DNA from: Selaginella moellendorffii
Taxonomy: Eukaryota; Plantae; Lycopodiophyta
DNA length: 64,000 nucleotides
NCBI RefSeq assembly: GCF_000143415.4
Contig: NW_003314261.1
Location: forward strand, 5,668,360-5,732,359
Reading direction: 5' to 3'
Shown here: in pieces, positions 14,936 through 34,788 of the stretch
Layout of the letters: each line of letters starts with the position of its first letter
Position numbering within the stretch: the stretch's first letter is position 1
Notes under the pieces: generated by a model
What the model saw: the letters and a program-made list of their open reading frames with translations, nothing else
The model's database searches: none
Told to the model about the DNA's origin: nothing
Position numbers and translations under genes: made by a program

Positions 14936-17783
14936 CTAATGATACCCGGACCACAAATCAAGTCGTGTAAAATACTTAGCCTTTAAGAGTTGGTTAAACA
15001 AGTTATCAATGCGAGGCAAAGGATAACTGTTTTTAACCGTGATCTTGCTGAGTGCCCGATAGTCAATACACATCCTCATGGTTCCATCCTTCTTCATAAC
15101 AAAAAAGACCGGCACTCCATAAGGTGACTTGCTTGGTCAGATATGACCTTTGTCAAGAAGCTCCGTGAGTTGCTTCTTGAGTTCAGCCATCTCCTTGATG
15201 TTCAACTGATATAGAGCTTTCGTAGGTGGTTTAGAACCTGGAATAACTTCAATCCGATGATCAACCTCACGACTAGGGGGTAGCCCTAGTGGTAAATCCT
15301 TCAGAAAGATATCCTGATTCCTCACCAACAACTACAATATCCTCTTTGGTACAGGATCAACCCCATCGCCGATTCAAACTGAGTCACCAACACCCTCAGC
15401 TTCCATCACTTGAACCCAAAAGGTCTAACATCCCTTCTTAGCTGCTTTTTGAGCAGCCCTCGTGTAAGCAACCAAAGGGAACGACTTGAGAGACGATCCA
15501 TGGGGTTCAAATATAGAGGGAAAGGGCCCATGAACAAGAGTGCACCCCCTTTTCCAATCGGTTAAGGGTCTTGGGATATTTGGGGTTAAGCATCTTTGGG
15601 TTTGAATAGTATTAGGTTGGGTGACCTCTTGGGAAGTCCAAACTCAGGAGCTTATATTTGGTATCAGAGCGGGTCTCAAGTTCGACTCTATTGGTTGGCT
15701 AGGGGAATTACACCACATGTTGATTGACATCTGGCTGGTCTAATTTGCTCCCGCTAGGCTCGACCTGAGGGGTAGGGTGTCAACAGAGCGGGGCTCTCAG
15801 GAGAGCTGCAGCTCTGTTGGTTGGCTAGGGGAATTACACCACATGTTGATTGACATCTGGCTGGTCCAGTTTGCTCCCGCTAGGCTCGACCCGAGGGGTA
15901 GGGTGTCAAGAGAGTGGGGCTCTCGGGAGAGCTGCGGCTCTGTTGGTTGGCTAGGGGAATTACACCACATGTTGATTGACATCTGGCTGGTCCAGTTTGC
16001 TCCCGCTAGGCTCAACCCGAGGGGTAGGGTGTCAAGAGAGTGGGGCTCTCAGGAGAGCTGCAGCTTTGTTGGTTGGCTAGGGGAATTACACCACATGTTG
16101 ATTGATATCTGGCTGGTCCAGTTTGCTCCCGTTGGGCTCGACTCGAGGGGTAGGGTGTCAAGAGAGCAGGCTCTCGGGAGAGCTGCGGCTCTCAGCTTCC
16201 ATTCACGAGGGCGTGAACTTGCAGGGAAGCGTGGTGGATTGTAAGCAACCAAAGAGAACGACTTGAGAGACGGTCCATGGGGTTCAAGTATAGAGGGAAA
16301 GGGCCTATGAATAAAAATACACCCCCTTTTCCAATCGGTTTAGGGTCTTGGGATATTTGGGGTTAAGCATTCTTGGGTTTGAATAATACTGGGCTGGGTG
16401 ACCTCCCGGGAAGTCAAAATCCAGGAGCTTACACCTCATAGTCAGGAACTTTGCATCCCAATCCTTTGAGGAACGCTTTTGCAACTGAAAGGATACATCA
16501 GGATGTCCTTCTGACTTCAACGTGATACAACTTTGTCCAGCACCATAAATCCCTTTTATATACTTGTTGAAGAAATCCATACCAAACACCATCTGAAAAT
16601 CTGGTATCTTCAACACTACCAAGTCCACTCTTTCTTTCTACTTGGATATCTTTATTGGAACATCACTCACAAACTTTCTGGCTACTTGCGCACCTTCCGC
16701 AAATCGGAAGTGCATAGGCGACATTTGCTCAGCATTCAATCCTAACAACTTAACTAAGTCTTCGGATATCATGCTGTGTGTAGCTTCTGTGTCAATCATC
16801 ACTTGGATTCGGTGTCCATGGACAAAGCCTACCAAATACATCAACGGATCAGTGTTTGCATTGACTGCAAGAAAAGCTTGAGGAAAGAAATGAAAGTTAC
16901 TCACCTCTTCTTCCTCATAGTCTGCATTGACCAACTCGTCAACCCCTTCAGCTTCACCACCACCGTCTTCCCTCATAACATTAACGCGAGACCTTGTCTT
17001 ATGCTTGTTGGGACATTCCAAAGACCTATGTCCCGACTCTCCACAATGGAAGCAATGACCCACGCTACCCGTTTCGCTAGGAGCAGGTTTTGCAAGTTGC
17101 TGCTACTTGTACCCACCAGGAGGAGGAACAGAGGGCCTAGGACCAGAAGAAGCTGCTGGTGGTCTCAAACCACCACCACCTTTGTTAACCGTAGCTTGTG
17201 AGCCTCCAGGGTGGTACCTACTTTCCACCCTTTGTTTCCGATCACCTTGCTTATTCCCAGAATTTCTATTCTTATCCGAGTTACCAGCATGCGGTTGCTA
17301 ATATTGTTCCATGAGCGAGTGACTAAAGGCAACTTGCTGCGCTGCCTCCTTACACTCTAGGTATGTCTTCGGCTTAAACTTCAAAATCTTATTGCAAGAA
17401 AGTGAACTTAAACCCTCCAGAAAATAACTCCGAGCATCTTCGTCACTCATATGTGCAATCATAACGCACTTTTGAGCAAACGCATTAATGCATGAGATCC
17501 CCTCGCTGCTTTAACCGCCGCAGCTCCACGCGAAGTCTTAGACCAAGATCATCCGGCAAGTATTCCTTACGGATACGAGACCGCATCTTGGTCCAACTTC
17601 TAGTCTGCCATTTTTCAGCACATACCTAGCGCCACCAAGTTTTGGCATGATCAGTAAGAAAGGATTGCGCTCACGCAACTTTCGTACGATCATCTACATC
17701 TGCCACTATGAAATAATTTTCCATATTGTAGACCCAATCTTCCAAAACTTGATAGTCCCACATGGCTCTAAAGTTGGGTGGTT
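14936..17783 (-). mobile_element. Gypsy gag-protease-RT start (degenerate), left-arm copy
   Basis: CFHCGESGHRSLEC knuckle, VMIDTEATH protease, LPPSREVDHRIE RT start. Confidence 0.9.
15463..16433 (+). mobile_element. Cassandra-type TRIM (5S rRNA-derived LTRs) with 4 x 126-bp internal repeat
   Basis: 194-bp LTRs 15463-15656 and 16240-16433. PBS TGGTATCAGAGC at 15659-15670. TSD CCTCG/CCTCA. LTR core GTTAAGCAT...GGGTGACCTC..GGGAAGTC matches the 5S A-C box region. Empty site seen in the paralog at ~153-157. Confidence 0.92.
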
Positions 17784-18062
17784 GTGGATCGGTTGTCAAA
17801 GATTGCACACTTCATTCCAACTGTGGGAACAGTAAATGCGAAACAAGTAGCAAAGCTCTTTTTCCATGAAGTAGTGCGAGTTCGTGGTCTTCCTGAAGAA
17901 ATGATCTCGGATAGAGATTCGAGGTTTACGGGGAAGTTTTGGGAGACCCTATTCCAGTTGTTTGGTACCAAGTTGAAGTTTAGTACGGCTTATCATCCTC
18001 AAACTGATGGGCAGACCGAACGCATGAATGCTCAAGTTGACGATTATCTACGGTACTATTGA
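17778..18062 (+). mobile_element. Gypsy integrase core fragment
   Basis: VVDRLSKIAHFIP...SDRDSRF...HPQTDGQTER; mirrored at 28341-28625 (-). Confidence 0.9.
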
Positions 18063-18706
18063 TTTATAAAAATAAATATTTATATACAATAATAAGGGCT
18101 ATGCTAAGCTTCATCACAGTAGCATGGTTATAACTACTAGGCTTTTGTCATGGTTGCATAGCCACAGCCACTAGGCAGCTGTGACAAAAGCCATGGCCAT
18201 GGCTTGTCTATTGTCATGGCTCTAAGCTACTCCAACAGCTCCCGCTGAGAATAAAACCAAGATAGCAAGAACAAGAAGTGGAGGGTTGTTACAAAATAAG
18301 AGAGTCACAAAAACCCATAGGCTGTAGCACTATGCCATACAAAGACTTTTGACATTAATGCATCACTTGGAAAATAAAATAAAAGCACTCTAGAGCTTTT
18401 GGTGAAGACAAAGATCTTGAGAAAAGAGGCATCATAGTGGGGAAGGATCAGGGCCTGTGTTTGCAACAGTATACATTGTTCATGAACACGGCCATGGGAA
18501 CATGACCCATGGCCATGTGCTCTGGAATTGGATCCTAAGATAAGAAGAAGCTGCCACCATGGTGATAATAGTGTAGTTTCAAGAGAGAGTGCCATGATGC
18601 TAGCAGTGCCAATACAAGCTTGCCAAAAATCCAATTTATATGGGCTGAAATTAACAGTTAAAATTTATGTTCTCAATAATTTTGAAATATATTATTCTTG
18701 ATTCTT

Positions 18707-19546
18707 TGAATTTTTCTTTCTTATTGTTGTTAAGAATCTTAAAAGGATGAGATCTATAATTAGTATTATCAAAAACCTCTAAAGATAAGTTTTAATTTTC
18801 ATCAGTATCATATAAACTTTGTTAAGATTTAAGATGGTTTAAATAAATGACATGTTAATATTAATTCAAAATACTTTTTAAAAAATTACAAATAATTTAA
18901 AGTAATTTTTTTGATGAACTAAATATACCATAATGGAAAATTAATAATATAGTTTTTTAATTAATATCAATATATTGAAAAAAACCATATATAAATGGAA
19001 ATTACTAATTATAATTTCCCTTCAAATCAATATAACTGCAATGAGCAAATAACATGCAACTTGATCATACCAATTGCTTTAAACAAGGTAGCATAGCATT
19101 TTCCTTCTTTCAGACTATCTAAATCTATCTGAATTTTTCTTTCTTATTGTTGTTAAGAATCTTAAAAGGATGAGATCTATAATTAGTATTATCAAAAACC
19201 TCTCAAGATAAGTTTTAATTTTCATCAGAATCATATATACTTTGTTAAGAGGTAAGATGGTTTAAATAAATGACATGATGATATTAATTCAAAATACTTT
19301 TAAAAACATTACAAATAATTTAATGTAATTTTTTTGATGAACTAAATATACTATAATTGAATATTAATAATATAGTTTTTTAATTAACATCACTATATTA
19401 AAAAAACCATATATAAATGGAATTTACTAATTACAATTTCCCTTCAAATCAATATAACTGCAATGAGCAAACAACATGCAACTTGATCATACCAATTGCT
19501 TTAAAAAAAGTAGCATAGCATTTTCCTTCTTTTAGACTATCTAAAT
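18707..19546. repeat. ~423-bp AT-rich tandem duplication (mirrored at ~26857-27696)
   Basis: Two diverged copies starting tgaatttttctttcttattgttg at ~18707 and ~19130. Confidence 0.85.
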
Positions 19547-20126
19547 ATTTAAGAAAATATTGATAGGGAGAGGGATTAAAAAGTGAATACAAAGAAAAAA
19601 TGAAGAGTACTGGATAGAAAAAAAAACTATCAAAATTGCTCTTGGGTTTATGAGAGTGTGAGTTTGGTTTAACAGAGTTAAGAGCAAGGAATACTAAAAG
19701 AAAAAAAGGAAAAATATAGGAAGAAAACCATGGAAAAAAGAAAGGAATGATAAAAAAAAGCATAATGAGAGAGTGAGGGAGGAATTAGACTGAGTTGGGA
19801 GGAGATTGGAAAGCAATAAACTGTGATGTAGTGTGTGTGGAGGGGGGCACTTGCAATCAAGTCAAGGCAAATGTATCTAGTACCTTTTGCTGCACTTATG
19901 GCTGCATTATTAAGTTTATCAACTGCTCCACCAGCTAGGGTGATCACTGATACACCCTTTGACAAAAGAATATTTCTTAAATTATATCTCATCAGAAATA
20001 ATATTATTATTAGAAAGAAAGAAACTATTGTAATTATTTCTAAATATTATTCTCTTTTTTTCTAGCTTTCCAAAGCAAAATAAATTATTTAAATATAATA
20101 CTGTATAACTTTTTCTTTTGAAGTTG

Positions 20127-21092
20127 TTAGTTCCTTATTTTTGTTTTCAAAATAAACATATATAATACTGCAGCACCTACAATTTGATGAACTATTAATC
20201 CCTTGCTTGTTATAAAAGTGTGAAGGAGTAAATAAAATTTAGTATTTAAAATTTGATATAAGACCTGAATGGGAAATAAGATAATTTGGTATATATAAGG
20301 TAATAAAAAACTCAATTTAAACCACCTTAATAAATCATCTAAAAACCAATCACTATGAGGTGAAGCTATAATATCATCAATAATCAAATCCCCAAATAAT
20401 GGAAATGGGTTATAAAGTCCATATTTTTTTAAAGTATGAATTCCTAAGTATATAAAAAGTTAAAACAAGTATATATATTTTAAAGTTTTACCTGTTATAT
20501 TATAAGGTTTAATATTATTTGAATTCCCATCTAAAGATAGTAATAAATCTGTTTTAGTTACCTCATTTGCATATTTATATATATACGAGCCTATATGGTA
20601 AATAAAAATCTTATTAATATTAATACTAAGAAGCTTTACCTGTTTTTGATATTGTTGGTATAAAATGCCAGGATGATAATTTAATACTTTTGTTATTTTG
20701 AATAATTATATTAATAAACTCCTCATAAGCTGTAGGATCTTGATGCCCAAAAGCATATATATCAGAGTAACTTATCTCACCAGATTTAGTTCTAACTGCC
20801 ACCTAATATAAATATAAAATTATATATTATACAGCTAATAGTTATTATTTACTGACCTTATCTCCAATAGAAATATCTTTTAGTTGCTTTTTATTACCAT
20901 TATCAAGTTGTAAAATTGCATCACCTATTTCACTATAGTACTTAATGTTTCTTAGTGATCAAATTTACCTGGAAAGCATGATTTTTTTTTACATTTTAAA
21001 TCTGAGTAACATTTATACCCATTTTTAAAATCACAATCTGTATCAATGAAGCATGAAAGAAAAAATAAAGTAAAGAACAAAACATTTTTCAT
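20127..21092 (-). CDS. Hog/Hint-domain (Hedgehog-like autoprocessing) secreted precursor, 5 exons, 256 aa; copy 1
   Basis: Mirror of 25311-26276. Exons 21092-20969, 20924-20857, 20802-20640, 20590-20492, 20443-20127. Has L5 and G25 where copy 2 has F5 and W25. Confidence 0.88.
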
Positions 21093-21518
21093 AATGAAGA
21101 TTTATTAATGATTAAATAAATTTGAAAGATGATTCTACTTCTATATATTCAATTTTTATCTTATAAACTAATGCCAAATGGATTAAAATCAAATTAAGCC
21201 TGCTGGCACTTTATTAAATCAAGCCATTTGTGTGTAATTTACTCTTAATTGATAATTTTGCCACTTGTCATTAGAATTGATAAACTAATATTGGACACCA
21301 ACAAAAGATGTTGTGAATATTTTTAAATAGGAATAGAAACTCTGAAAACCTAATTCTAAAGTTTTGTACAAAGATTATTCAACAAAGAAAAAATTAATAC
21401 CTTCTTACTTGCATAGAGATTGATCAGAAAGCTTGCCATTGCAAGTTCTAGCAGCATGTATGCTCTTGTTTCACCTTGTAGACCACCAAGTTGCTAGAAG
21501 AACAGCCTAGCAACATGG

Positions 21519-21782
21519 CTATGGACTTGCTTGCTTAAAGACACTTACAAATACCTTGGTTACACTCTTGTTAAGTAGCTGCCCAAAATATTTCATTACT
21601 TTTATATACACTTGGGCTTGAGGGATAGGGATTGTTCCTGAGAGATTGTTGTAGGAAACGTTGAAGTATCCCAGCTTAGTAAGATTGATGAGAGTCTCCG
21701 GAATTGAGTCAGATAGTCTGTTCCTTGTCAAGTCTAGGCCCTCAAGCACTGAGAGTCTTCCAAAAAGCCGGGATCTTTCCAC
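21519..21782 (-). pseudogene. Plant extracellular LRR (LRR-RLK/RLP) gene fragment
   Basis: LSVLEGLDLTRNRLSDSIPETLINLTKLGYFNVSYNNLSGTIP: two LRRs only. Confidence 0.75.
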
Positions 21783-24596
21783 TAAACCTGTTTCCCAAGA
21801 GTGTCAGGTACATGAACTGCTGCTGAGAGTTGATGATTTAGGGCACTAGAGCATGATGAGAAAGAGATTGAGTCAATGGCACACTCTCCACCAACAAAAC
21901 ACATGGAAAGAGGGTGTTAGATATACAAAGGGAGAAGATTTTTCACAGTTTTCTAGAAAAAATTTTAAAAAGAAATTCTCAGTAGAATTTGATTAATAAA
22001 AACCTAAACATTATATTGAAATGACTAGTTTGATTACTCATAAATCACTTTAACCATATCTAGAGTTATTGGGGCTTAACAAGGGAAGATCAGCAATCAA
22101 AGGTACTGTAGCTAGCTATTGCTCCAAGGATATATCTAGCTTCTATATATAAATAGATTATATATTCAATTAAAAAATAATTATGATCATTCTTACTTAG
22201 TTCTCAAATTGTCACTATTTCTAATAAAAACCTCCTCATTAGATCCAATTGCATTGTCTAGGCACACTGAAGTTGCAATGAACTCCTACCATTGGAGAAG
22301 GGAGAAAAAGACAAGCTCGAGGATTCAAGCTTAGGAAAGTAAACTTGAGAGGTTCAAGGTTAGGACTGTATTCCTAACCTTGACGTATGAATTCCTAAGT
22401 ATATAAAAGCCAGGCAAACAACATAATCAGATGCATCTACTTGTACAATGAATTCCTGTGTCCAGTCTGGTTGAACCAGTATGGGGGCTTTTGTAAGCTT
22501 ATCCTTAAGTGTGTCAAAGGTTGGAGAGTAAGAAGAAAATTACAACAATGTTGTTCCCGTATATTGAGGCTTTGTCAGTCAACAATGATAGAGTATTGGT
22601 GATTGTCCCTCACGCCCAGGTGAGGGCAATGAAGGAGAAGCATGACCATAGCGACGGGAGTGAGGCACAGGAAAAAGAGGATGAGGAGCAAGACGACCAA
22701 GAAGAGGCATAGGACTGTATTCCTAACCTTGATGTGAGCAATAGCGACTATAAAAGTAGAACTTAGAATGTTTTTAGACTTATCCCTAATACAAAATACA
22801 TTGCAATACATCGTCATTCTGCCTAGGCTGAATTATATCATGTGGATCCATAGTGAATACCACATCATAAAAGCCATTGAAAATATAGAAGGTATTTTTA
22901 TTCACATAACAAAGAAAGCTCTCACCTTTTTTTATTTTTTGCATATAGATCTCATCAATGACAATGACCACTTGGAGCCATTTCTTAATGCCATGAGCTT
23001 GGGAGCATATGTTGAGAATTTTATCATTGTTGAAAAATATCCACAACTAGACAAATTTGCCTTGCACTTAATAATTCCTAAATAAAACCTCATAAGCAAC
23101 AATCATTTGTCTTGCTGCCTTATGGGGCATCTCTCACCAATTATTGCAAATGTGACTTTGGGTATTAAAAGATAGTTGCTAAGTTGAGGCTAACTTATAA
23201 TAGCTTCTAAGAAAGCATTTGAGTGCAATGTTGCAAAATAACTGAGAGAACAAGAAAAATAAGATGCTAAAGAAGCAAAACTTTTTGAAAACCAAAGTAA
23301 ACAATATGAAAATAAAAACAATGCTAGAAAGCAAACAAGCAACTAAACTCAAATATAATCAAAAGTAACTCAAATGGCANNNNNNNNNNNNNNNNNNNNN
23401 NNNNNNNNNNNNNNNNNNNNNNNNNNNNNNNNNNNNNNNNNNNNNNNNNNNNNNNNNNNNNNNNNNNNNNNNNNNNNNNTTTGTCGATTTGAATGCTTTC
23501 GTCTTGAGTGTGTATCTTTGGCAGTGGAATTTCCTGCGTGTGATCCTCTGGGTTTTCTTTGACATGGGGTGGTTCCTCCAGCGTGTTCTCATGCTCCACA
23601 AGTCCTTGTTCCTTTGGAGTTTCCTTCTGGAATTCTCCTTGTTCGTCTTGAACTTCCACTCGTTTTTCCTGTGCCTCTTCTTGGTCGTCTTGCTCCTCAT
23701 CCTCTTTTTCCTGTGCCTCACTCCCGTCGCTATGGTCATGCTTCTCCTTCACTGCCCTCACCTGGGCGTGAGGGACGATCACCAATACTCTATCATTGTT
23801 GACTGACAAAGCCTCAATATACGGGAACAACATTGTTGTAATTTTCTTCTTACTCTCCAGCCTTTGACACACTTAAGGATAAGCTTACAAAAGCCCCCAT
23901 ACTGGTTCAACTAGACTGGACACAGGAATTCATTGTACAAGTAGATGCATCTGATTATGTTGTTTGCCTGGCTTTTATATACTTAGGAATTCATACGTCA
24001 AGGTTAGGAATACAGTCCTAACCTTGAACCTCTCAAGTTTACTTTCCTAAGCTTGAATCCTCGAGCTTGTCTTTTTCTCCCTTCTCCAATGGTAGGAGTT
24101 CATTGCAACTTCAGTGTGCCTAGACAATGCAATTGGATCTAATGAGGAGGTTTTTATTAGAAATAGTGACAATTTGAGAACTAAGTAAGAATGATCATAA
24201 TTATTTTTTAATTGAATATATAATCTATTTATATAGAAGCTAGATATATCCTTGGAGCAATAGCTAGCTATAGTACCTTTGATTGCTGATCTTCCCTTGT
24301 TAAGCCCCAATAACTCTAGATATGGTTAAAGTGATTTATGAGTAATCAAACTAGTCATTTCAATATAATGTTTAGGTTTTTATTAATCAAATTCTACTGA
24401 GAATTTCTTTTTAAAATTTTTTCTAGAAAACTGTGAAAAATCTTCTCCCTTTGTATATCTAACACCCTCTTTCCATGTGTTTTGTTGGTGGAGAGTGTGC
24501 CATTGACTCAATCTCTTTCTCATCATGCTCTAGTGCCCTAAATCATCAACTCTCAGCAGCAGTTCATGTACCTGACACTCTTGGGAAACAGGTTTA

Positions 24597-24884
24597 GTGG
24601 AAAGATCCCGGCTTTTTGGAAGACTCTCAGTGCTTGAGGGCCTAGACTTGACAAGGAACAGACTATCTGACTCAATTCCGGAGACTCTCATCAATCTTAC
24701 TAAGCTGGGATACTTCAACGTTTCCTACAACAATCTCTCAGGAACAATCCCTATCCCTCAAGCCCAAGTGTATATAAAAGTAATGAAATATTTTGGGATC
24801 AAAATATTCCTAGCATCTAGGCAGCTACTTAACAAGAGTGTAACCAAGGTATTTGTAAGTGTCTTTAAGCAAGCAAGTCCATAG
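24597..24884 (+). pseudogene. Plant extracellular LRR gene fragment (mirror copy)
   Basis: Same two LRRs, with 24 bp extra at ~24798-24821. Confidence 0.75.
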
Positions 24885-25310
24885 CCATGTTGCTAGGCTG
24901 TTCTTCTAGCAACTTGGTGGTCTACAAGGTGAAACAAGAGCATACATGCTGCTAGAACTTGCAATGGCAAGCTTTCTGATCAATCTCTATGCAAGTAAGA
25001 AGGTATTAATTTTTTCTTTGTTGAATAATCTTTGTACAAAACTTTAGAATTAGGTTTTCAGAGTTTCTATTCCTATTTAAAAATATTCACAACATCTTTT
25101 GTTGGTGTCCAATATTAGTTTATCAATTCTAATGACAAGTGGCAAAATTATCAATTAAGAGTAAATTACACACAAATGGCTTGATTTAATAAAGTGCCAG
25201 CAGGCTTAATTTGATTTTAATCCATTTGGCATTAGTTTATAAGATAAAAATTGAATATATAGAAGTAGAATCATCTTTCAAATTTATTTAATCATTAATA
25301 AATCTTCATT

Positions 25311-26276
25311 ATGAAAAATGTTTTCTTCTTTACTTTATTTTTTCTTTCATGCTTCATTGATACAGATTGTGATTTTAAAAATTGGTATAAATGTTACTCA
25401 GATTTAAAATGTAAAAAAAAATCATGCTTTCCAGGTAAATTTGATCACTAAGAAACATTAAGTACTATAGTGAAATAGGTGATGCAATTTTACAACTTGA
25501 TAATGGTAATAAAAAGCAACTAAAAGATATTTCTATTGGAGATAAGGTCAGTAAATAATAACTATTAGCTGTATAATATATAATTTTATATTTATATTAG
25601 GTGGCAGTTAGAACTAAATCTGGTGAGATAAGTTACTCTGATATATATGCTTTTGGGCATCAAGATCCTACAGCTTATGAGGAGTTTATTAATATAATTA
25701 TTCAAAATAACAAAAGTATTAAATTATCATCCTGGCATTTTATACCAACAATATCAAAAACAGGTAAAGCTTCTTAGTATTAATATTAATAAGATTTTTA
25801 TTTACCATATAGGCTCGTATATATATAAATATGCAAATGAGGTAACTAAAACAGATTTATTACTATCTTTAGATGGGAATTCAAATAATATTAAACCTTA
25901 TAATATAACAGGTAAAACTTTAAAATATATATACTTGTTTTAACTTTTTATATACTTAGGAATTCATACTTTAAAAAAATATGGACTTTATAACCCATTT
26001 CCATTATTTGGGGATTTGATTATTGATGATATTATAGCTTCACCTCATAGTGATTGGTTTTTAGATGATTTATTAAGGTGGTTTAAATTGAGTTTTTTAT
26101 TACCTTATATATACCAAATTATCTTATTTCCCATTCAGGTCTTATATCAAATTTTAAATACTAAATTTTATTTACTCCTTCACACTTTTATAACAAGCAA
26201 GGGATTAATAGTTCATCAAATTGTAGGTGCTGCAGTATTATATATGTTTATTTTGAAAACAAAAATAAGGAACTAA
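25311..26276 (+). CDS. Hog/Hint-domain (Hedgehog-like autoprocessing) secreted precursor, 5 exons, 256 aa; copy 2
   Basis: Exons 25311-25434, 25479-25546, 25601-25763, 25813-25911, 25960-26276, with GT-AG introns of 44, 54, 49 and 48 nt, give 771 nt open: MKNVFFFTLFFLSCFIDTDCDFKNWYKCYSDLKCKKKS-CFPGDAILQLDNGNKKQLKDISIGDKV...YSDIYAFGHQD...KLSSWHFI...YGLYNPFPLFGDLIIDDIIASPHS plus a hydrophobic tail. Confidence 0.9.
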
Positions 26277-28619
26277 CAACTTCAAAAGAAAAAGTTATAC
26301 AGTATTATATTTAAATAATTTATTTTGCTTTGGAAAGCTAGAAAAAAAGAGAATAATATTTAGAAATAATTACAATAGTTTCTTTCTTTCTAATAGTAAT
26401 ATTATTTCTGATGAGATATAATTTAAGAAATATTCTTTTGTCAAAGGGTGTATCAGTGATCACCCTAGCTGGTGGAGCAGTTGATAAACTTAATAATGCA
26501 GCCATAAGTGCAGCAAAAGGTACTAGATACATTTGCCTTGACTTGATTGCAAGTGCCCCCCTCCACACACACTACATCACAGTTTATTGCTTTCCAATCT
26601 CCTCCCAACTCAGTCTAATTCCTCCCTCACTCTCTCATTATGCTTTTTTTTATCATTCCTTTCTTTTTTCCATGGTTTTCTTCCTATATTTTTCCTTTTT
26701 TTCTTTTAGTATTCCTTGCTCTTAACTCTGTTAAACCAAACTCACACTCTCATAAACCCAAGAGCAATTTTGATAGTTTTTTTTTCTATCCAGTACTCTT
26801 CATTTTTTCTTTGTATTCACTTTTTAATCCCTCTCCCTATCAATATTTTCTTAAATATTTAGATAGTCTAAAAGAAGGAAAATGCTATGCTACTTTTTTT
26901 AAAGCAATTGGTATGATCAAGTTGCATGTTGTTTGCTCATTGCAGTTATATTGATTTGAAGGGAAATTGTAATTAGTAAATTCCATTTATATATGGTTTT
27001 TTTAATATAGTGATGTTAATTAAAAAACTATATTATTAATATTCAATTATAGTATATTTAGTTCATCAAAAAAATTACATTAAATTATTTGTAATGTTTT
27101 TAAAAGTATTTTGAATTAATATCATCATGTCATTTATTTAAACCATCTTACCTCTTAACAAAGTATATATGATTCTGATGAAAATTAAAACTTATCTTGA
27201 GAGGTTTTTGATAATACTAATTATAGATCTCATCCTTTTAAGATTCTTAACAACAATAAGAAAGAAAAATTCAGATAGATTTAGATAGTCTGAAAGAAGG
27301 AAAATGCTATGCTACCTTGTTTAAAGCAATTGGTATGATCAAGTTGCATGTTGTTTGCTCATTGCAGTTATATTGATTTGAAGGGAAATTATAATTAGTA
27401 ATTTCCATTTATATATGGTTTTTTTCAATATATTGATATTAATTAAAAAACTATATTATTAATTTTCCATTATGGTATATTTAGTTCATCAAAAAAATTA
27501 CTTTAAATTATTTGTAATTTTTTAAAAAGTATTTTGAATTAATATTAACATGTCATTTATTTAAACCATCTTAACTCTTAACAAAGTTTATATGATACTG
27601 ATGAAAATTAAAACTTATCTTTAGAGGTTTTTGATAATACTAATTATAGATCTCATCCTTTTAAGATTCTTAACAACAATAAGAAAGAAAAATTCAAAGA
27701 ATCAAGAATAATATATTTCAAAATTATTGAGAACATAAATTTTAACTGTTAATTTCAGCCCATATAAATTGGATTTTTGGCAAGCTTGTATTGGCACTGC
27801 TAGCATCATGGCACTCTCTCTTGAAACTACACTATTATCACCATGGTGGCAGCTTCTTCTTATCTTAGGATCCAATTCCAGAGCACATGGCCATGGGTCA
27901 TGTTCCCATGGCCGTGTTCATGAACAATGTATACTGTTGCAAACACAGGCCCTGATCCTTCCCCACTATGATGCCTCTTTTCTCAAGATCTTTGTCTTCA
28001 CCAAAAGCTCTAGAGTGCTTTTATTTTATTTTCCAAGTGATGCATTAATGTCAAAAGTCTTTGTATGGCATAGTGCTACAGCCTATGGGTTTTTGTGACT
28101 CTCTTATTTTGTAACAACCCTCCACTTCTTGTTCTTGCTATCTTGGTTTTATTCTCAGCGGGAGCTGTTGGAGTAGCTTAGAGCCATGACAATAGACAAG
28201 CCATGGCCATGGCTTTTGTCACAGCTGCCTAGTGGCTGTGGCTATGCAACCATGACAAAAGCCTAGTAGTTATAACCATGCTACTGTGATGAAGCTTAGC
28301 ATAGCCCTTATTATTGTATATAAATATTTATTTTTATAAATCAATAGTACCGTAGATAATCGTCAACTTGAGCATTCATGCGTTCGGTCTGCCCATCAGT
28401 TTGAGGATGATAAGCCGTACTAAACTTCAACTTGGTACCAAACAACTGGAATAGGGTCTCCCAAAACTTCCCCGTAAACCTCGAATCTCTATCCGAGATC
28501 ATTTCTTCAGGAAGACCACGAACTCGCACTACTTCATGGAAAAAGAGCTTTGCTACTTGTTTCGCATTTACTGTTCCCACAGTTGGAATGAAGTGTGCAA
28601 TCTTTGACAACCGATCCAC

Positions 28620-31600
28620 AACCACCCAACTTTAGAGCCATGCGGGACTATCAAGTTTTGGAAGATTGGGTCTACGATATGGAAAATTATTTCATAGTGG
28701 CAGATGTAGATGATCGTACGAAAGTTGCGTGCGCGCAATCCTTTCTTACTGATCATGCCAAAACTTGGTGGCGCCAGGTATGTGCTGAAAAAGGGCAGAC
28801 TAGAAGTTGGACCAAGATGCGGTCTCGTATTCGTAAGGAATACTTGCCGAATGATCTTGGTCTAAGACTTTGCATGGAGCTGCGGTGGTTAAAGCAGCGA
28901 GGGGATCTCATGCATTACGTTAATGCGTTTGCTCAAAAGTGCGTTATGATTGCACATATGAGTGACGAAGATGCTCGGAGTTATTTTCTGGAGGGTTTAA
29001 GTTCACTTTCTTGCAATGAGATTTTGAAGTTTAAGCCGAAGACATACCTGGAGTGTAAGGAGGCAGCACAGCAAGTTGCCTTTAGTCACTCGCTCATGGA
29101 ACAATATTAGCAACCACAGGCTGGTAACTCGGATAAGAATAGAAATTCTGGGAATAAGCAAGGTGATCGGAAACAAAGGGTGGAAAGTAGGTACCACCTT
29201 GGAGGCTCACAAACTACGGTTAACAAAGGTGGTGGTGGTTCGAGACCACCAGCAACTTCTTCTGGTCCTAGGCCCTCTGTTCCTCCTCCTGGTGGGTACA
29301 AGCAGTAGCAACTTGCAAAACCTGCTCCTAGCGAAACGGGTAGCGTGGGTCATTGCTTCCATTGTGGAGAGTCGGGACATAGGTCCTCGGAATGTCCCAA
29401 CAAGCATAAGACAAGGTCTCGCATTAATGTTATGAGGGAAGACGGTGGTGGTGAAGCTGAAGGGGTTGACGAGTTGGTCAATGCAGACTATGAGGAAGAA
29501 GAGGTGAGTAACTTTCGTTTCTTTCCTCAAGCTTTTCTTGCAGTCAATGCAAACACTGATCCGTTGATGTATTTGGTAGGCTTTGTCCATGGACACTGAA
29601 TCCAAGTGATGATTGACATAGAAGCTACGCACAACGTGATATCCGAAGACTTAGTTAAGTTGTTAGGATTGAATGCTGAGCAAATGTCGCCTCTGATTTG
29701 CGGAAGGTGGGCAAGTAGCCAGAAAGTTTGTGAGTGATGTTCCAATAAAGATATCCAAGTGGAAAGAAAGAGTGGACTTGGTAGTGTTGAAGATACCAGA
29801 TTTTTAGATGGTGTTTGGTATGGATTTCTTCAACAAGTATATAAAAGGGATTTATGGTGCTGGACAAAGTTGTATCACGTTGAAGTCAGAAGGACATCCT
29901 GATGTATCCTTTCAGTTGCAAAAGCGTTCCTCAAAGGATTGGGATGCAAAGTTCCTGACTATGAGGTGTAAGCTCCTGGATTTGGACTTCCCGGGAGGTC
30001 ACCCAGCCCAGTATTATTCAAACCCAAGGATGCTTAACCCTAAATATCCCAAGACCCTAAACCGATTGGAAAAGGGGGTGTATTTTTATTCATGGGCCCT
30101 TTCCCTCTATACTTGAACCCCATGGACTGTCTCTCAAGTCGTTCTCTTTGGTTGCTTACAATCCACCACGCTTTCCTGCAAGTTCACACCCTCGTGAATG
30201 GAAGCTGAGAGCCGCAGCTCTCCCGAGAGCCTGCTCTCTTGACACCCTACCCCTCGGGTCGAGCCCAGCGGGAGCAAACTGGACCAGCCAGATGTCAATC
30301 AACATGTGGTGTAATTCCCCTAGCCAACCAACAGAGCCGCAGCTCTCCCGAGAGCCCCACTCTCTTGACACCCTACCCCTCGGGTCGAGCCTAGCGGGAG
30401 CAAACTGGACCAGCCAGATGTCAATCAACATGTGGTGTAATTCCCCTAGCCAACCAACAGAGCTGCAGCTCTCCTGAGAGCCCCGCTCTGTTGACACCCT
30501 ACCCTTCGGGTCGAGCTTAGCGGGAGCAAATTGGACCAGCCAGATGTCAATCAACATGTGGTGTAATTCCCCTAGCCAACCAATAGAGTCAAACTCGAGA
30601 CCCGCTCTGATACCAAATATAAGCTCCTGAGTTTGGACTTCCCAAGAGGTCACCCAACCTAGTACTATTCAAACCCAAGGATGCTTAACCCCAAATATCC
30701 CAAGACCCTTAACCGATTGGAAAAGGGGGTGCACTCTTGTTCATGGGCCCTTTCCCTCTATATTTGAACCCCATGGATCGTCTCTCAAGTCGTTCCCTTT
30801 GGTTGCTTACACGAGGGTCGCTCAAAAAGCAGCTAAGAAGGGATGTTGGACCTTTTGGGTTCAAGTGATGGAAGCTGAGGGTGTTGGTGACTCAGTTTGA
30901 ATTGGCGATGGGGTTGATCCTGTACTAAAGAGGATATTGGAGTTGTTGGTGAGGAATCAGGATATCTTTCTGAAGGATTTACCACTAGGGCTACCCCCTA
31001 GTCGTGAGGTTGATCATCGGATTGAAGTTATTCCAGGTTCTAAACCACCTACGAAAGCTTTATATCAGTTGAACATCAAGGAGATGGCTGAACTCAAGAA
31101 GCAACTCACGGAGCTTCTTGACAAAGGTCATATCTGACCAAGCAAGTCACCTTATGGAGTGCCGATCTTTTTTGTTATGAAGAAGGATGGAACCATGAGG
31201 ATGTGTATTGACTATCGAGCACTCAGCATGATCACGGTTAAAAATAGTTATCCTTTGCCTCGCATTGATGACTTGTTTAACCAATTCTTAAAGGCTAAGT
31301 ATTTTACGCGACTTGATTTGTGGTCCGGGTATCATTAGATACGGATGGTGGATCATGATGTGGAGAAGACAACCTTTAAAACTTGGTATGGATCTTATGA
31401 GTTCCTTGTCATGCTGTTTGGGTTATGCACTGCTCCAGCAACGTTCAGCACTATGATGGATAGAATATTCAGAGATTTTTTGGACGCATTTGTTGTCCTA
31501 TATATCGATGATGTTCTAGTCTTTAGTGAAACGTTGGAGGATCATTTGAAACACTTGGAGCTGGTGTTTCAGAAGTTGCGCGAACACAAACTATATGCTA

Positions 31601-32833
31601 AGGAAAGTAAATGCGCTTTTGGTCAATTGCACGTAAACTTTCTCAGACATATAGTTGGTGGTGGCGTGATTGAGGTCGATCCAAAGAAGGTGGAAGCGGT
31701 GAAGTCCTGGGAAGTCCCGACCATTGTATCAGATGTTCGTTCCTTTCTCGGTTTGGCGGGATATTATCACAAGTTTGTCCGCAATTTTGCAAGAATTGTT
31801 CTTTTGTTGACTAAGTTGACGAAGAGTAATATTCCATTTCATTGGACACCAGCTTATCAGCGTGCTTTTGTACGGTTGAAGAAGATCTTGACTATGGTTC
31901 CTGTTCTTAGGATCCCAGATCTTGATAAACCCTTCGAAGTGCATTGTGATGCATCTGGTTATGCTATTGGTGCCGTGTTACAGCAAGATTGTGATAAAGC
32001 TGTTGGTGTTACGCTAAAGTGACATGGTTGTCCCGTTGCGTTCTATTCCAAGAAATTAGATGAGACCCAATGAAGATGGCCAACGCATGAGAAAGAGATG
32101 TTTGCTATAGTGTCGGCCTTGGAACACTGGAGACACTACTTGGGTGGACATACCAAGGTTTATACAGATAGTAACACACTAAGCTACTTTGCTACGCAGC
32201 CTAAATTTACGCCAAAGCAAGCTCGTTGGCAAGAGAAGCTTGCTAGATATGATATTGAAATCATATATAAACTTGGTAAAGACAATATTGTTCCGGATGC
32301 ATTGAGTCGTCCAGCTCAGTTCAAGCAATATCGGCAATCAGTTTGGACTGGTCGGAGGACGTTCAGGCTTCATATAGAAGTGATCCATTGGCGAAGGCAA
32401 TCTTATGCTGTATGGGGTTGTTGAAGCAGAGCCCTGGTAGCGAAGCAACGAAAGTTGCTAGTCGCATTAATGCAAAGCTTCACTTCTCAATTCGGGATGG
32501 GCTTATATTCTATAAGCAAGAAAGATTGTATCTTCCTGCTAAGGATCTGCAATAGTTATTTCTACGGGAACATCATGATGTTCCAGCAGCAGGGCATGGT
32601 GGGAAGCAAAAGACTCTGGCTTCATTGAAAAAGGGATTTTTCTGGTCTGGTATGGAAGGTGATGTAGTGGATTATGTTTGTTTCTGCCTTATATGCTAGC
32701 AATGTAAGTGCAAAACTGAGAAGCAGGCTGGAAAGTTGCAATGCATTCCAGCACTGGCATGGCCATTTCAAAATGTGACACTTGATTTCGTCACTTGTTT
32801 GCTGAAGTCTAAGGGTTATGATGCTTTGATGGT
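28620..32833 (+). mobile_element. Gypsy gag-PR-RT-RH-integrase N-terminus (degenerate), internally inverted segment
   Basis: Gag, zinc knuckle, protease, RT (LYIDDVLV), RNase H (CDASGYAIGAVL) and start of integrase; many stops. Confidence 0.92.
29967..30811 (-). mobile_element. Cassandra-type TRIM with 3 x 126-bp internal repeat (mirror copy)
   Basis: LTRs 29967-30160 and 30618-30811; PBS on minus at 30604-30615. Confidence 0.92.
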
Positions 32834-33476
32834 CCAAACTCCGAGCCCATTGCGCTACGAGCGAGGGTCCGGTACAATCCCACGAGCACCAGCTCCTTGT
32901 ATCCAGCACTTGCATGCAAAATGGTGTGGAGGTTGGGCTTAGACCCAAGCCGGACATAGAACAAGGAGCGACACTGCCTAGTGGGAGCCAAACTAATGTC
33001 TATCCCTACTATACATTTGGAACCCCCCACAGCCCCCCCCCCCCCCCCCCCCACATGATATGCCAAATGAGCGAATCTAGACACTTTCCATAAATAGCAT
33101 ATGGGGACCGAAATGAGACCAACACTAAGGGCATGATAGCGAGGGTGTTTGGCAGACACGGTAAGCTATCATTTGGCGATATTGAGGGACTAGTCTCAAT
33201 ACGCGAGGGTTCTTGTCACTAGCCAGTGCAAGACATAACGAGACAGGAACTCCTTACCGGGCTAAGTATGCTTAGCTAATAATACATAGGAATTCCGTCC
33301 TTATTGCTCGTCCGGTCTAAGTACACTCAAAATGCCCAGTTAACTTCACTAGCACAAGAGGGGCTGCTAAAGGGATCCAACTGTACCAATCTCCTGCCGT
33401 CATGGCAGTAAGGAAAGAGTGTCTGTAAGGACTGGTCAACAAGTATCTTTCGATACCCGAAGTCACATTTGCGACA
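32833..33476 (-). mobile_element. Truncated Gypsy LTR (same family as 1847-2750)
   Basis: Aligns from ~1870 to the GTCACATTTGCGACA terminus, with internal deletions. Confidence 0.85.
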
Positions 33477-34788
33477 CTAGCACTACTAGACTCGGGTGCA
33501 ACTTCCTGCTTCAAGTTCATGGACACAGACTTTGCTGCTCGACATCATGTTCCTCTTTCTTCTACCATACGGGATCTGAGGGTTGAAGGCATTGGCGGGC
33601 ATTTTGTGTCTCCATCTTCTGGACTTAGGGAAACGTTGCTCGTTCGAGTACACATCGTGTCCTGCCAAAGTCAAGACTATTTTTGAATGGGAGGCTCCAC
33701 AATCAATATTGGACGTTCGGCAGGCCAGCAGGCCTTCGACACACTCAAGGCGGCCTTCAGTTCTGCTCCCGTCTTGATCCACGCTGATCCCTCACAACCT
33801 TTCTTCATTGAGGCTGACGTCTCCGACTTTGCCATCGGTGCTGTGCTGTCTCAACTCGGAGCGGATCACAAACTTCATCCGGTCACTTTCCATTCTCGGA
33901 AATTCCAGCCTATGGAGATCAATTACGAAATCCACGACAAGGAGCTCCTTGCCATCGTAGATTCCTTTGGAGAGTGGCGTCATTTCTTGGAGGGGGCGGG
34001 CCATCAAACAAGAGTCTTGACGGATCACAAAAATCTCGAGTACTTTGCCACTTTTGGAGTTTTGAGCCGTCATCAAGCAAGGTGGGCACAATTCCTGAGT
34101 TTGTTTGACTTTTTTATCAAGTACAGACCTGAAAAGCTTCAAGGCCTTCTTGATGCTCTTTCAAGGCACTCCTATCTTAGTCTCAGGCATGGTAATCCTG
34201 CCTTCAATCAACAGGATCAAGTTATCCTTGGTCCTGATCGGCTTCAAATTATGGCAATTTCCCTGGCCCCTCAAGACTCCTCCTTGATAGATGCGATCAG
34301 AAACGATCTTCAATCTGATGACCTTGCCAGCGACATTTTCCCCCATCTTCAGGCTGGACACCCAGTGACTTCCGACTGCCGGCGATTTGACAAGTTCGAG
34401 TTCTTAGATGGCTTGTTGTACCGTGGGGAGCAGCTTTACGTTCCTGAAGGTGATGCTCGAAGGTTGGTCCTAATGGCGTGCCACGATAGCCCGACTGCTG
34501 GTCACTTCGGCATCACAAAGACCTATGAGCTGGTTGCACGGGACTTTTGGTGGCCTCACATAGATGACTACATCAAAACTTTTGTTACCTCCTGTGACAC
34601 TTGCGCCCGAAATAAGGTACCTCGCCACCTTCCTTCAGGTTTGCTTCGTTCCCTCCCGGTCCCTTTAGATCCTTGGGAATCCATCTCCATGGATTTCTTG
34701 AGTGATCTTCTAAGTTCTTGAGGCTTCAACAGCATTTTAGTCGTGGTGGATCGCTTCACAAAGATGGCCCACTTCCTGCCGCACAAAT
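33477..34788 (+). mobile_element. Second Gypsy family: RT end, RNase H, integrase N-terminus
   Basis: EADVSDFAIGAVLSQ, YEIHDKELLAIV, HDSPTAGHFG...CDTC, VVDRFTKMAHF. Confidence 0.9.

What the first reader, a model, noticed from the sequence alone, without database searches (positions are those of the whole stretch)
25311..26276. Hidden Hedgehog-like precursor in a plant: signal peptide + ~20-aa Cys-rich peptide + Hog autoprocessing domain
Seen: five short exons splice to an uninterrupted 256-aa ORF that the ORF track misses except for the last exon. A hydrophobic leader is followed by DCDFKNWYKCYSDLKCKKKS and then CFPG. Counting from that Cys gives C1, H46 and S69-x-x-H72, then GLYNP...GDLIIDDIIAS and a hydrophobic tail placed like the sterol-recognition region. 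Established: Drosophila Hedgehog HhC uses C1, D46 and T69xxH72 to cleave itself and attach a sterol to the N-terminal product; as I recall, a D46H swap remains active. Hog domains are known outside animals, I believe including early-diverging plants, but I know of no assigned function there. Inference: the gene releases a tiny secreted, possibly sterol-anchored peptide, which would be an undescribed lipidated plant peptide ligand or defence peptide.
Basis: partly seen in the sequence, partly recalled or inferred. Interest (0 to 1): 0.9.

Follow-up and report, generated by a model that had tools for sequence, protein, structure and literature searches.

The report
Unannotated divergent spikemoss Hog gene
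This is a real, intact but unannotated and unusually AT-rich extra member of a spikemoss gene family, known since 2008, that joins a secreted front piece (here about 20 residues) to a Hedgehog-type self-cleaving domain. Whether it is expressed, cleaves itself or attaches a sterol is untested.

Summary
Five exons (25311-26276, +) with four GT..AG introns of 44-54 nt join into a 256-codon open frame; composition-matched shuffles carry about 22 stops. Exons 3 and 5 hit Pfam Hint collinearly, and exons 3-5 match plant Hog proteins in order. A plant-Hog profile hits Drosophila Hedgehog-C at E 1e-27. This places Cys39, His84, Ser107 and His110 on Hedgehog C1, D46, T69 and H72.

Three introns sit at the same codon and phase as in annotated Selaginella moellendorffii Hog genes. 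The fourth lies near a Diphasiastrum intron, so this is a native paralogue, not contamination or foreign DNA. A second DNA sample carries the locus with the same flanks.

The kind is not new. Plant Hog genes were published in 2008, RefSeq annotates at least 15 spikemoss proteins, and this scan has already reported sister loci. His-46 is the norm outside animals. The Cys-143 that animal Hedgehog needs is Pro here.

What is new:
- No public protein is more than 40% identical.
- Coding GC is 25% in a CpG-free island.
- The cargo is a novel 20-residue Lys/Cys peptide.

No RNA evidence was found, and the other sample carries an exon-1 inversion and a frameshift. The window holds a second, inverted, near-identical copy. 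Sterol attachment remains speculative.

The parts
25311..25434 (+). Exon 1. It encodes the start codon, a hydrophobic leader (residues 1-18, a probable signal peptide), a 20-residue Lys/Cys-rich peptide (residues 19-38) and the catalytic Cys39 of CFP(G). It ends in phase 1 inside the Gly42 codon.
   Evidence: Translation; in-frame stops just upstream; hydropathy peak at residues 4-18. The intron after CFP|G in phase 1 is shared with the S. moellendorffii and Diphasiastrum Hog genes. SignalP was not available.
25479..25546 (+). Exon 2, the start of the Hint fold (DAILQLDNGNKKQLKDISIGDK). It ends in phase 0 after IGDK.
   Evidence: It aligns at 45% identity to P0012 in A1. The intron position and phase are identical to L001, L002 and L004.
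25601..25763 (+). Exon 3. It carries YAFGH (His84, Hedgehog position 46) and LSSWHF (Ser107 and His110, Hedgehog T69 and H72).
   Evidence: Pfam Hint, 24.1 bits, E 3e-5, profile positions 43-87. BLASTP to Diphasiastrum P0003 residues 245-305, E 1e-11. Column mapping to 6TYY/1AT0.
25813..25911 (+). Exon 4, the middle of the Hint fold (SYIYKYANEV...PYNIT). It ends in phase 1.
   Evidence: BLASTP to P0003 residues 312-341, E 0.006, collinear. The downstream intron position and phase are shared with L001, L002 and L004.
25960..26276 (+). Exon 5. It holds the end of Hint (GLYNPFPLFGDLIIDDIIASPHS; Pro180 sits at the Hedgehog Cys-143 column), the conserved adduct/sterol-recognition-like region (WFLD...LPYIYQIILFPIQVLY), a hydrophobic C-terminal tail and the stop codon.
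   Evidence: Pfam Hint, 15.6 bits, profile positions 132-171. phmmer against 1.84 billion representatives gave 293 hits, the best at 82.9 bits. BLASTP to P0003 residues 348-421, E 8e-24. Tail hydropathy.
20127..21092 (-). Second copy of the same five-exon gene in the other arm of a palindrome. It is intact and differs by F5L and W25G only.
23800..28200 (.). AT-rich, CpG-depleted island that holds the gene (GC 0.30, CpG observed/expected 0.09).

Best explanation
The stretch is a genuine, structurally intact, unannotated and strongly diverged paralogue of the Hog gene family of Selaginella moellendorffii or a very close relative. Hog means Hedgehog-type Hint plus adduct-recognition region.

It lies in a CpG-depleted, AT-rich island next to gypsy retrotransposon pieces. 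In this assembly it appears twice, as the two arms of a palindrome around an assembly gap.

Inferred mechanism, by homology only:
1. The leader takes the precursor into the ER.
2. Cys39 attacks the Ser38 carbonyl (N-to-S acyl shift), helped by Ser107-x-x-His110.
3. The thioester is resolved by a nucleophile, possibly activated by His84. That nucleophile could be water, a sterol or another hydroxyl compound.
4. This releases a roughly 20-residue Lys/Cys-rich peptide and leaves the Hog part held in the membrane by its hydrophobic tail.

The frame and most family-conserved residues survived a massive AT shift. The gene was therefore under purifying selection for most of its history, but it may now be silent or dispensable.
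For: Gene model:
- The frame is open across five exons against about 22 expected stops.
- Exons 3, 4 and 5 match plant Hog proteins in order; exon 2 aligns in register in the MAFFT alignment only.
- The joined model aligned in local scripts from residue 38 to about 230 at 30-40% identity.
- Introns 1, 2 and 4 have the same position and phase as in annotated S. moellendorffii genes and in Diphasiastrum. Intron 3 lies 2-3 codons from a Diphasiastrum intron of the same phase.

Family:
- The A1 profile hits Drosophila Hedgehog-C structures at E 1e-26 to 1e-27.
- The tree puts the model inside the land-plant Hog clade, with support 91/89.

Selection:
- 44 of 59 family-conserved columns are kept, against a 22% match elsewhere.
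- This holds despite GC3 of 0.17 and a FYMINK share of 0.43, against 0.25-0.27 in relatives.

Not a contaminant:
- A second sample's DNA contigs carry the locus collinear with its flanks at ordinary depth.

Organism:
- Sister proteins are S. moellendorffii RefSeq entries.
- The window's PPR protein is about 97% identical to an S. moellendorffii one.
Against: - No RNA run holds it, and no public predicted protein or fragment resembles it closely.
- It sits in a CpG-free island typical of long-methylated DNA.
- In the second sample the locus has a 93-nt inversion inside exon 1 and a 4-nt deletion at the start of exon 5. With the window's letters, each of these creates an early stop.
- Its terminal branch is the longest in the tree, and its retention of conserved columns (0.75) is the lowest among land-plant members.
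- Cys-143, needed in animal Hedgehog, is Pro here.
- Cleavage has never been shown for any plant Hog in the papers I could search.
Confidence: 0.8

Rival explanations
1. It is a young pseudogene. On this reading the copy is silenced in methylated, TE-rich DNA, no longer expressed, and merely not yet hit by a disabling mutation in this individual.
For: The island is CpG-free and AT-rich. No RNA holder and no predicted protein were found. The other sample carries disabling changes. The terminal branch is the longest in the tree, and family-conserved residues are lost at R125Y, T166P, R211Q and G218N. The scan's earlier notes describe other silent or decayed Hog copies in this genome.
Against: A frame of 256 codons at 25% GC cannot stay open through the amount of change seen unless it was selected for most of that time. 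The catalytic Cys, His, Ser and His residues, the core motifs and all eight splice-site dinucleotides are intact. Both copies are intact.
Confidence: 0.35
2. One reading: the Hog domain esterifies a plant sterol to Ser38. This would make a sterol-anchored 20-residue secreted signalling or defence peptide.
For: Four of the five Hedgehog active-site positions are compatible: C1, H46, S69 and H72. D46H Hedgehog still autoprocesses. The region after Hint is conserved among plant Hogs, and Bürglin reports the SRR motif K in moss Hog domains. The peptide is cationic and Cys-rich.
Against: Cys-143 is absent (Pro180), and in animal Hedgehog its loss abolishes autoprocessing. No adduct has been shown for any non-animal Hog, and Bürglin uses 'adduct recognition region' precisely because the adduct is unknown. 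The peptide has three Cys, an odd number, and no relatives. Expression has not been shown.
Confidence: 0.12
3. It is foreign DNA: a contaminant, or a horizontal transfer from an AT-rich protist with short introns.
For: Coding GC is 25% against 43-55% for neighbouring and sister genes. The introns are tiny and the composition is odd.
Against: Intron positions and phases are shared with lycophyte Hog genes, and 49-65 nt introns are normal for the S. moellendorffii sisters. The tree places the model inside land plants. The plant LRR fragment upstream shares the CpG depletion. The same flanks are seen in an independent sample at ordinary depth.
Confidence: 0.03

Closest known systems
Selaginella moellendorffii Hog proteins. 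RefSeq calls them 'indian hedgehog B protein' (XP_002985754.2) and 'warthog protein 4/6' (XP_024535844.1, XP_024531687.1). The pSm Hog of Bürglin 2008 belongs here.
   Same: The architecture is the same: leader, variable front piece, CFPG, Hint, conserved WFLD..LP..YQ region and hydrophobic tail. They share His at position 46 and lack Cys at position 143. Three intron positions and phases are identical, and intron sizes are 49-65 nt.
   Different: Identity is only 35-40%. The tree places the model outside the tight clade of short S. moellendorffii genes. It has one extra intron. Its coding GC is 25% with one CpG, against 43-45% and 24-27 CpG. Its front piece is an unrelated 20-residue, three-Cys, Lys-rich peptide, where XP_002985754.2 has about 34 residues with four Cys. 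It is not annotated.
Diphasiastrum complanatum KAJ7298589.1, with the Ceratodon and Adiantum 'long' Hog proteins
   Same: These are the nearest group in the tree. Exon 5 is 49% identical to the Diphasiastrum protein. All four introns of the model have a counterpart in the Diphasiastrum gene, one of them offset by 2-3 codons.
   Different: Those proteins carry 180-240-residue front domains, for which no trace exists near this gene. Diphasiastrum introns are 277-1226 nt, and it has one more intron in the C-terminal region.
Animal Hedgehog C-terminal autoprocessing domain (Drosophila HhC: PDB 1AT0, 6TD6, and 6TYY with His at position 46)
   Same: The Hint fold is shared by profile match, E 1e-26 to 1e-27. 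C1, the T/S69-x-x-H72 motif and a general-base position 46 are shared.
   Different: Position 46 is His, not Asp. Cys-143 is replaced by Pro. There is no Hedge signalling domain. The C-terminal region resembles other plant Hogs rather than the animal SRR, beyond what Bürglin calls motif K. Cholesterol transfer has been shown only for the animal proteins.

Membership tests
Pfam Hint module (PF01079), Hog domain | Significant match to the family profile | tested here: met
   Searched exon by exon. Exon 3 scored 24.1 bits (E 3e-5, profile 43-87) and exon 5 scored 15.6 bits (E 0.013, profile 132-171). The matches are collinear. The simple sum of 39.7 exceeds the 29.7-bit cut-off, but neither exon passes alone. 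The plant-Hog profile that includes the window's exons hits Hedgehog-C structures at E 1e-27.
Hog domain | Catalytic Cys at the cleavage site (Hedgehog C1), preceded by a small residue | tested here: met
   Ser38-Cys39 in SCFPG. The column is Cys in 130 of 131 aligned Hog domains.
Hog domain | T/S-x-x-H motif (Hedgehog T69, H72) | tested here: met
   Ser107-Ser-Trp-His110. Column 69 is T in 82 and S in 47 domains; column 72 is H in 128.
Hog domain | General base at Hedgehog position 46 (Asp in animals) | tested here: met
   His84, as in 109 of 130 fetched Hog domains. D46H Hedgehog autoprocesses in cells (PMC12054796), and PDB 6TYY has His there.
Animal Hedgehog-type active site | Cys-143 (motif J Cys), required for autoprocessing in animal Hedgehog | tested here: not met
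   Pro180 sits at that column. Among 130 Hog domains the column is S 30, A 28, C 28, T 20, P 10, V 10. The requirement in Sonic Hedgehog comes from PMC12054796. Bürglin noted the replacement in moss.
Hog domain | Conserved region C-terminal to Hint (SRR/ARR) | tested here: met
   WFLD..LPYIYQIILFPIQVLY aligns with all plant Hogs. Similarity to the animal SRR itself was not tested beyond Pfam profile position 171.
Hog domain | Self-cleavage and transfer of an adduct to the front piece | not testable with these tools
   This needs biochemistry. No paper in the searchable library reports it for a plant Hog.
Land-plant Hog gene family (vertical descent) | Shared intron positions and phases, and placement in the clade | tested here: met
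   Introns after CFP|G (phase 1), IGDK|V (phase 0) and ..IT|G (phase 1) are identical to L001, L002 and L004. The land-plant clade has support 91/89, but the model's long branch makes its exact place unsure.
Expressed gene | Spliced transcripts | tested here: inconclusive
   No run on record as RNA holds it. The four runs laid are DNA contigs with introns retained. No protein fragment of 57-182 aa resembles exon 5.

The most novel reading that the evidence does not exclude
Spikemoss keeps a fast-evolving, heterochromatin-embedded Hog gene whose only cargo is a roughly 20-residue cationic Cys peptide. The peptide is released, and possibly lipid-tagged, by a Cys-143-independent version of the Hedgehog reaction. 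It varies between copies: both differences between the two copies are amino-acid changes in exon 1. That would make it a minimal natural system for self-cleaving, perhaps sterol-anchored, plant defence or signalling peptides.
Probability: 0.08. Interest if true: 0.75.

Novelty: new member of a known kind. Interest (0 to 1): 0.3.

Why it matters
What Hog domains do outside animals has been open since 2008. Nobody has shown that a plant Hog cleaves itself or what it attaches.

This gene adds three things:
- It is a naturally minimal precursor of 256 residues with a 20-residue cargo, which would be easy to express and follow by mass spectrometry.
- It shows that His-46 without Cys-143 is the usual non-animal active site.
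- It is an odd case of a coding frame preserved through an extreme AT shift in CpG-free DNA.

It is not the best entry point to the question, though. Expressed, annotated sister genes exist, and this copy may be silent or dispensable.

Tried and rejected
Joined model. That rules out Pfam, PDB, structure prediction, cluster look-up and encoding-contig look-up of the whole protein. Those steps are left out. The joined sequence was built and used only in local scripts: translation, blastp, MAFFT and a tree against proteins already fetched.

Searches that gave nothing useful:
- Single exons against PDB by phmmer: no hit. The profile A1 was needed.
- Exon 1 in the ESM Atlas: no usable hit.
- Local blastp-short of the front piece: nothing beyond the CFPG motif.
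- Exon 5 against proteins of 57-182 aa: none.
- Rfam on the whole window: nothing.
- The search of earlier findings by sequence: blank.
- Exon 2 alone by BLASTP hit a non-collinear spot. It aligns correctly only in the MAFFT alignment.
- RefSeq PPR proteins and LOC9658011 could not be located on contigs. I therefore could not compare the window with the reference assembly at DNA level.

Ideas dropped:
- A Cys five residues before the catalytic Cys might stand in for Cys-143. It occurs in 16 of 103 domains without Cys-143, and other upstream positions are similar.
- A longer upstream cargo exon. In-frame stops lie before the ATG, and nothing nearby resembles long-type cargo.

Not done: SignalP or TM predictors (not available), and dN/dS against paralogues (saturated at 40% identity). 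The full list of differences in the second sample was truncated by the tool, so no exon-versus-intron divergence test was possible.

Full report
**What is there**

On the + strand, 25311-25434, 25479-25546, 25601-25763, 25813-25911 and 25960-26276 join through four GT..AG introns of 44, 54, 49 and 48 nt. The result is a 771-nt frame of 256 codons plus a stop.

The product starts with a hydrophobic leader, MKNVFFFTLFFLSCFIDT. The peptide DCDFKNWYKCYSDLKCKKKS follows, and then CFPG with Cys39. Counting from Cys39, His falls at position 46 and SSWH at 69-72.

The frame is not a chance product of AT-rich DNA:
- Shuffles of the same letters carry 22.4 stops on average, and none of 20,000 was open.
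- The other two frames of the spliced sequence have 21 and 33 stops.
- In-frame stops lie just upstream of the ATG.
- Nothing nearby resembles the large front domains of related proteins, so exon 1 is the first coding exon.

**Family, exon by exon**

- Pfam Hint (PF01079) matches exon 3 at 24.1 bits (profile 43-87) and exon 5 at 15.6 bits (profile 132-171). Neither reaches the 29.7-bit cut-off alone. They are collinear and add up to more.
- phmmer with exon 5 against 1.84 billion representatives gave 293 hits. The best reached only 41-48% identity.
- The named hits are Hog proteins of S. moellendorffii, Diphasiastrum, Ceratodon, Adiantum and green algae.
- Against the Diphasiastrum protein, exons 3, 4 and 5 match residues 245-305, 312-341 and 348-421 in order, with E values of 1e-11, 0.006 and 8e-24.
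- Exon 2 falls in register in the MAFFT alignment A1.
- A profile of A1 hits the solved Drosophila Hedgehog autoprocessing domain (6TYY, 6TD6, 1AT0) at E 1e-26 to 1e-27.

In that alignment the plant CFPG Cys is Hedgehog C1. The His of YAFGH is position 46. L(T/S)xxHF is T69-x-x-H72. The residue between AS and HS is Cys-143. In this gene those positions are Cys39, His84, Ser107, His110 and Pro180.

**Gene model and descent**

No RNA data could be had, so I used intron positions. I reconstructed the exon chains of two annotated S. moellendorffii Hog genes (L001 and L002, from GCA_000143415.2) and of the Diphasiastrum gene (L004).
- The spikemoss genes have introns after CFP|G (phase 1), IGDK|V (phase 0) and ..VT|E (phase 1). 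These are exactly introns 1, 2 and 4 of the model, and they are 49-65 nt long.
- The Diphasiastrum gene has the same three. It also has one of phase 1 lying 2-3 codons from the model's intron 3.

A maximum-likelihood tree puts the model inside the land-plant Hog clade (91/89). It sits with the long-type genes rather than in the tight clade of short spikemoss genes. Its end branch is the longest (1.73 against a median of 0.72) and its composition is odd, so its exact place is unsure.

Together these results rule out a contaminant or a transfer from an AT-rich protist. The reads agree. DNA contigs of a second sample and study carry the locus, about 95% alike. They are collinear from the LRR fragment upstream to beyond the gene, at the same depth as the flanks and with introns in place.

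The window's 794-residue PPR protein differs from an S. moellendorffii RefSeq protein by 22 residues and two gaps. The organism is therefore that species or a very near relative, as earlier notes of this scan say.

**What is unusual**

- No public protein is more than 40% identical to the model. It is unannotated and has no close sister.
- Coding GC is 25% (GC1/2/3 = 0.31/0.28/0.17) against 0.43-0.45 for the sister genes. The gene has one CpG against their 24-27.
- The gene lies in a 4.4-kb island (23800-28200) with GC 0.30 and CpG observed/expected 0.09. The rest of the window is at 0.6-0.9. The island also holds an LRR fragment and is bordered by gypsy pieces.
- The protein's make-up has followed the DNA. 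FYMINK residues are 43% against 25-27% in relatives.
- Even so, 44 of 59 family-conserved columns are kept, against 22% agreement elsewhere. Most of the losses are V/L/M to I/L swaps.

This is the pattern of a gene held by purifying selection under strong AT pressure. It is not the pattern of a long-dead copy.

**Against present-day function**

- No run on record as RNA holds the stretch.
- No protein fragment like exon 5 exists in the 5.8-billion collection.
- CpG loss suggests long-standing methylation.
- In the second sample a 93-nt piece of exon 1 (25332-25424) is inverted. Four bases are also missing at 25965 in exon 5. With the window's letters, each change gives an early stop.

I could not see that sample's full sequence, so this rests on the tool's tables.

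**Second copy**

The gene occurs again at 20127-21092 on the minus strand. It sits in the other arm of a palindrome (arms 15000-22714 and 23667-31274) whose centre holds a 100-N gap.

Over about 4.1 kb the arms differ at five bases. Two of these are the non-synonymous changes F5L and W25G in exon 1. Whether this is a real inverted duplication or two haplotypes joined at a gap is open.

**Comparison with what is known**

Bürglin (2008, PMC2362128) reported Hog domains in S. moellendorffii, S. lepidophylla and Physcomitrella. He noted signal peptides, motifs J and K, and the motif-J Cys replaced. RefSeq names at least 15 spikemoss proteins 'warthog protein' or 'indian hedgehog B protein'. Their front pieces range from almost nothing, through Pro-rich stretches, to a 34-residue four-Cys peptide.

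Across 130 fetched Hog domains:
- position 46 is His in 109 and Asp in 18;
- position 143 is Cys in only 28.

For animal Hedgehog, D46H still autoprocesses, but C143A and C143D do not (PMC12054796). The Pro at that column means the Hedgehog mechanism cannot be assumed unchanged. I found no paper testing cleavage or an adduct for any plant Hog.

**Verdict**

The reading as a Hog precursor with a tiny secreted cargo is supported. The claims of novelty of kind and of sterol attachment are not.

It is a new, divergent, unannotated member of a known family, possibly silent. This scan has already reported sister loci on other DNA of the same genome.

**Left out by rule**

No remote search or fold used the joined protein. 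It was handled only in local scripts.

Noticed in passing
window 15000-31274: There is a large palindrome with arms 15000-22714 and 23667-31274. The core 17486-21583 / 24820-28917 differs at 5 bases, and the outer parts are 97-99% alike. It surrounds a 100-N gap at 23380-23479. It is either a real inverted duplication or two haplotypes joined head to head in scaffolding.
   Followed up: partly
window 23800-28200: This is an AT-rich island almost free of CpG (observed/expected 0.09, GC 0.30), set in a window of GC about 0.47 and CpG o/e 0.6-0.9. It holds the Hog gene and an LRR fragment (24597-24884). The cause is probably long-term methylation-driven decay, which was not tested.
   Followed up: partly
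window 23973-23996 and 25946-25969: An exact 24-nt repeat covers the end of intron 4 plus the first 10 nt of exon 5. Its other copy sits where a gypsy RNase H-like reading frame breaks off. It is unexplained. The 4-nt deletion of the second sample lies inside the genic copy.
   Followed up: no
window 26997-27696: A 277-nt unit is repeated at a spacing of 423 nt (26997-27273 and 27420-27696). The second sample's contigs skip 27264->27689, so they carry one unit.
   Followed up: no
window 54508-56892: An intact 794-residue PPR gene with an E motif. It is about 97% identical in residues to an S. moellendorffii RefSeq PPR (22 mismatches, two gaps). The exact product is not on record.
   Followed up: partly
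window 28341-34721 and mirror 15000-18062: Ty3/gypsy retrotransposon pieces border the island. They include a gag zinc knuckle, RT, RNase H and an integrase zinc-binding domain, and their CpG content is normal.
   Followed up: partly
fetched proteins P0001-P0257: Among 130 Hog domains from plants, algae, metagenomes and animals, His at Hedgehog position 46 and a non-Cys residue at position 143 are the majority state. One hit is labelled as a Geminicoccaceae bacterial MAG (P0182), which may be a mis-binned eukaryotic contig.
   Followed up: no
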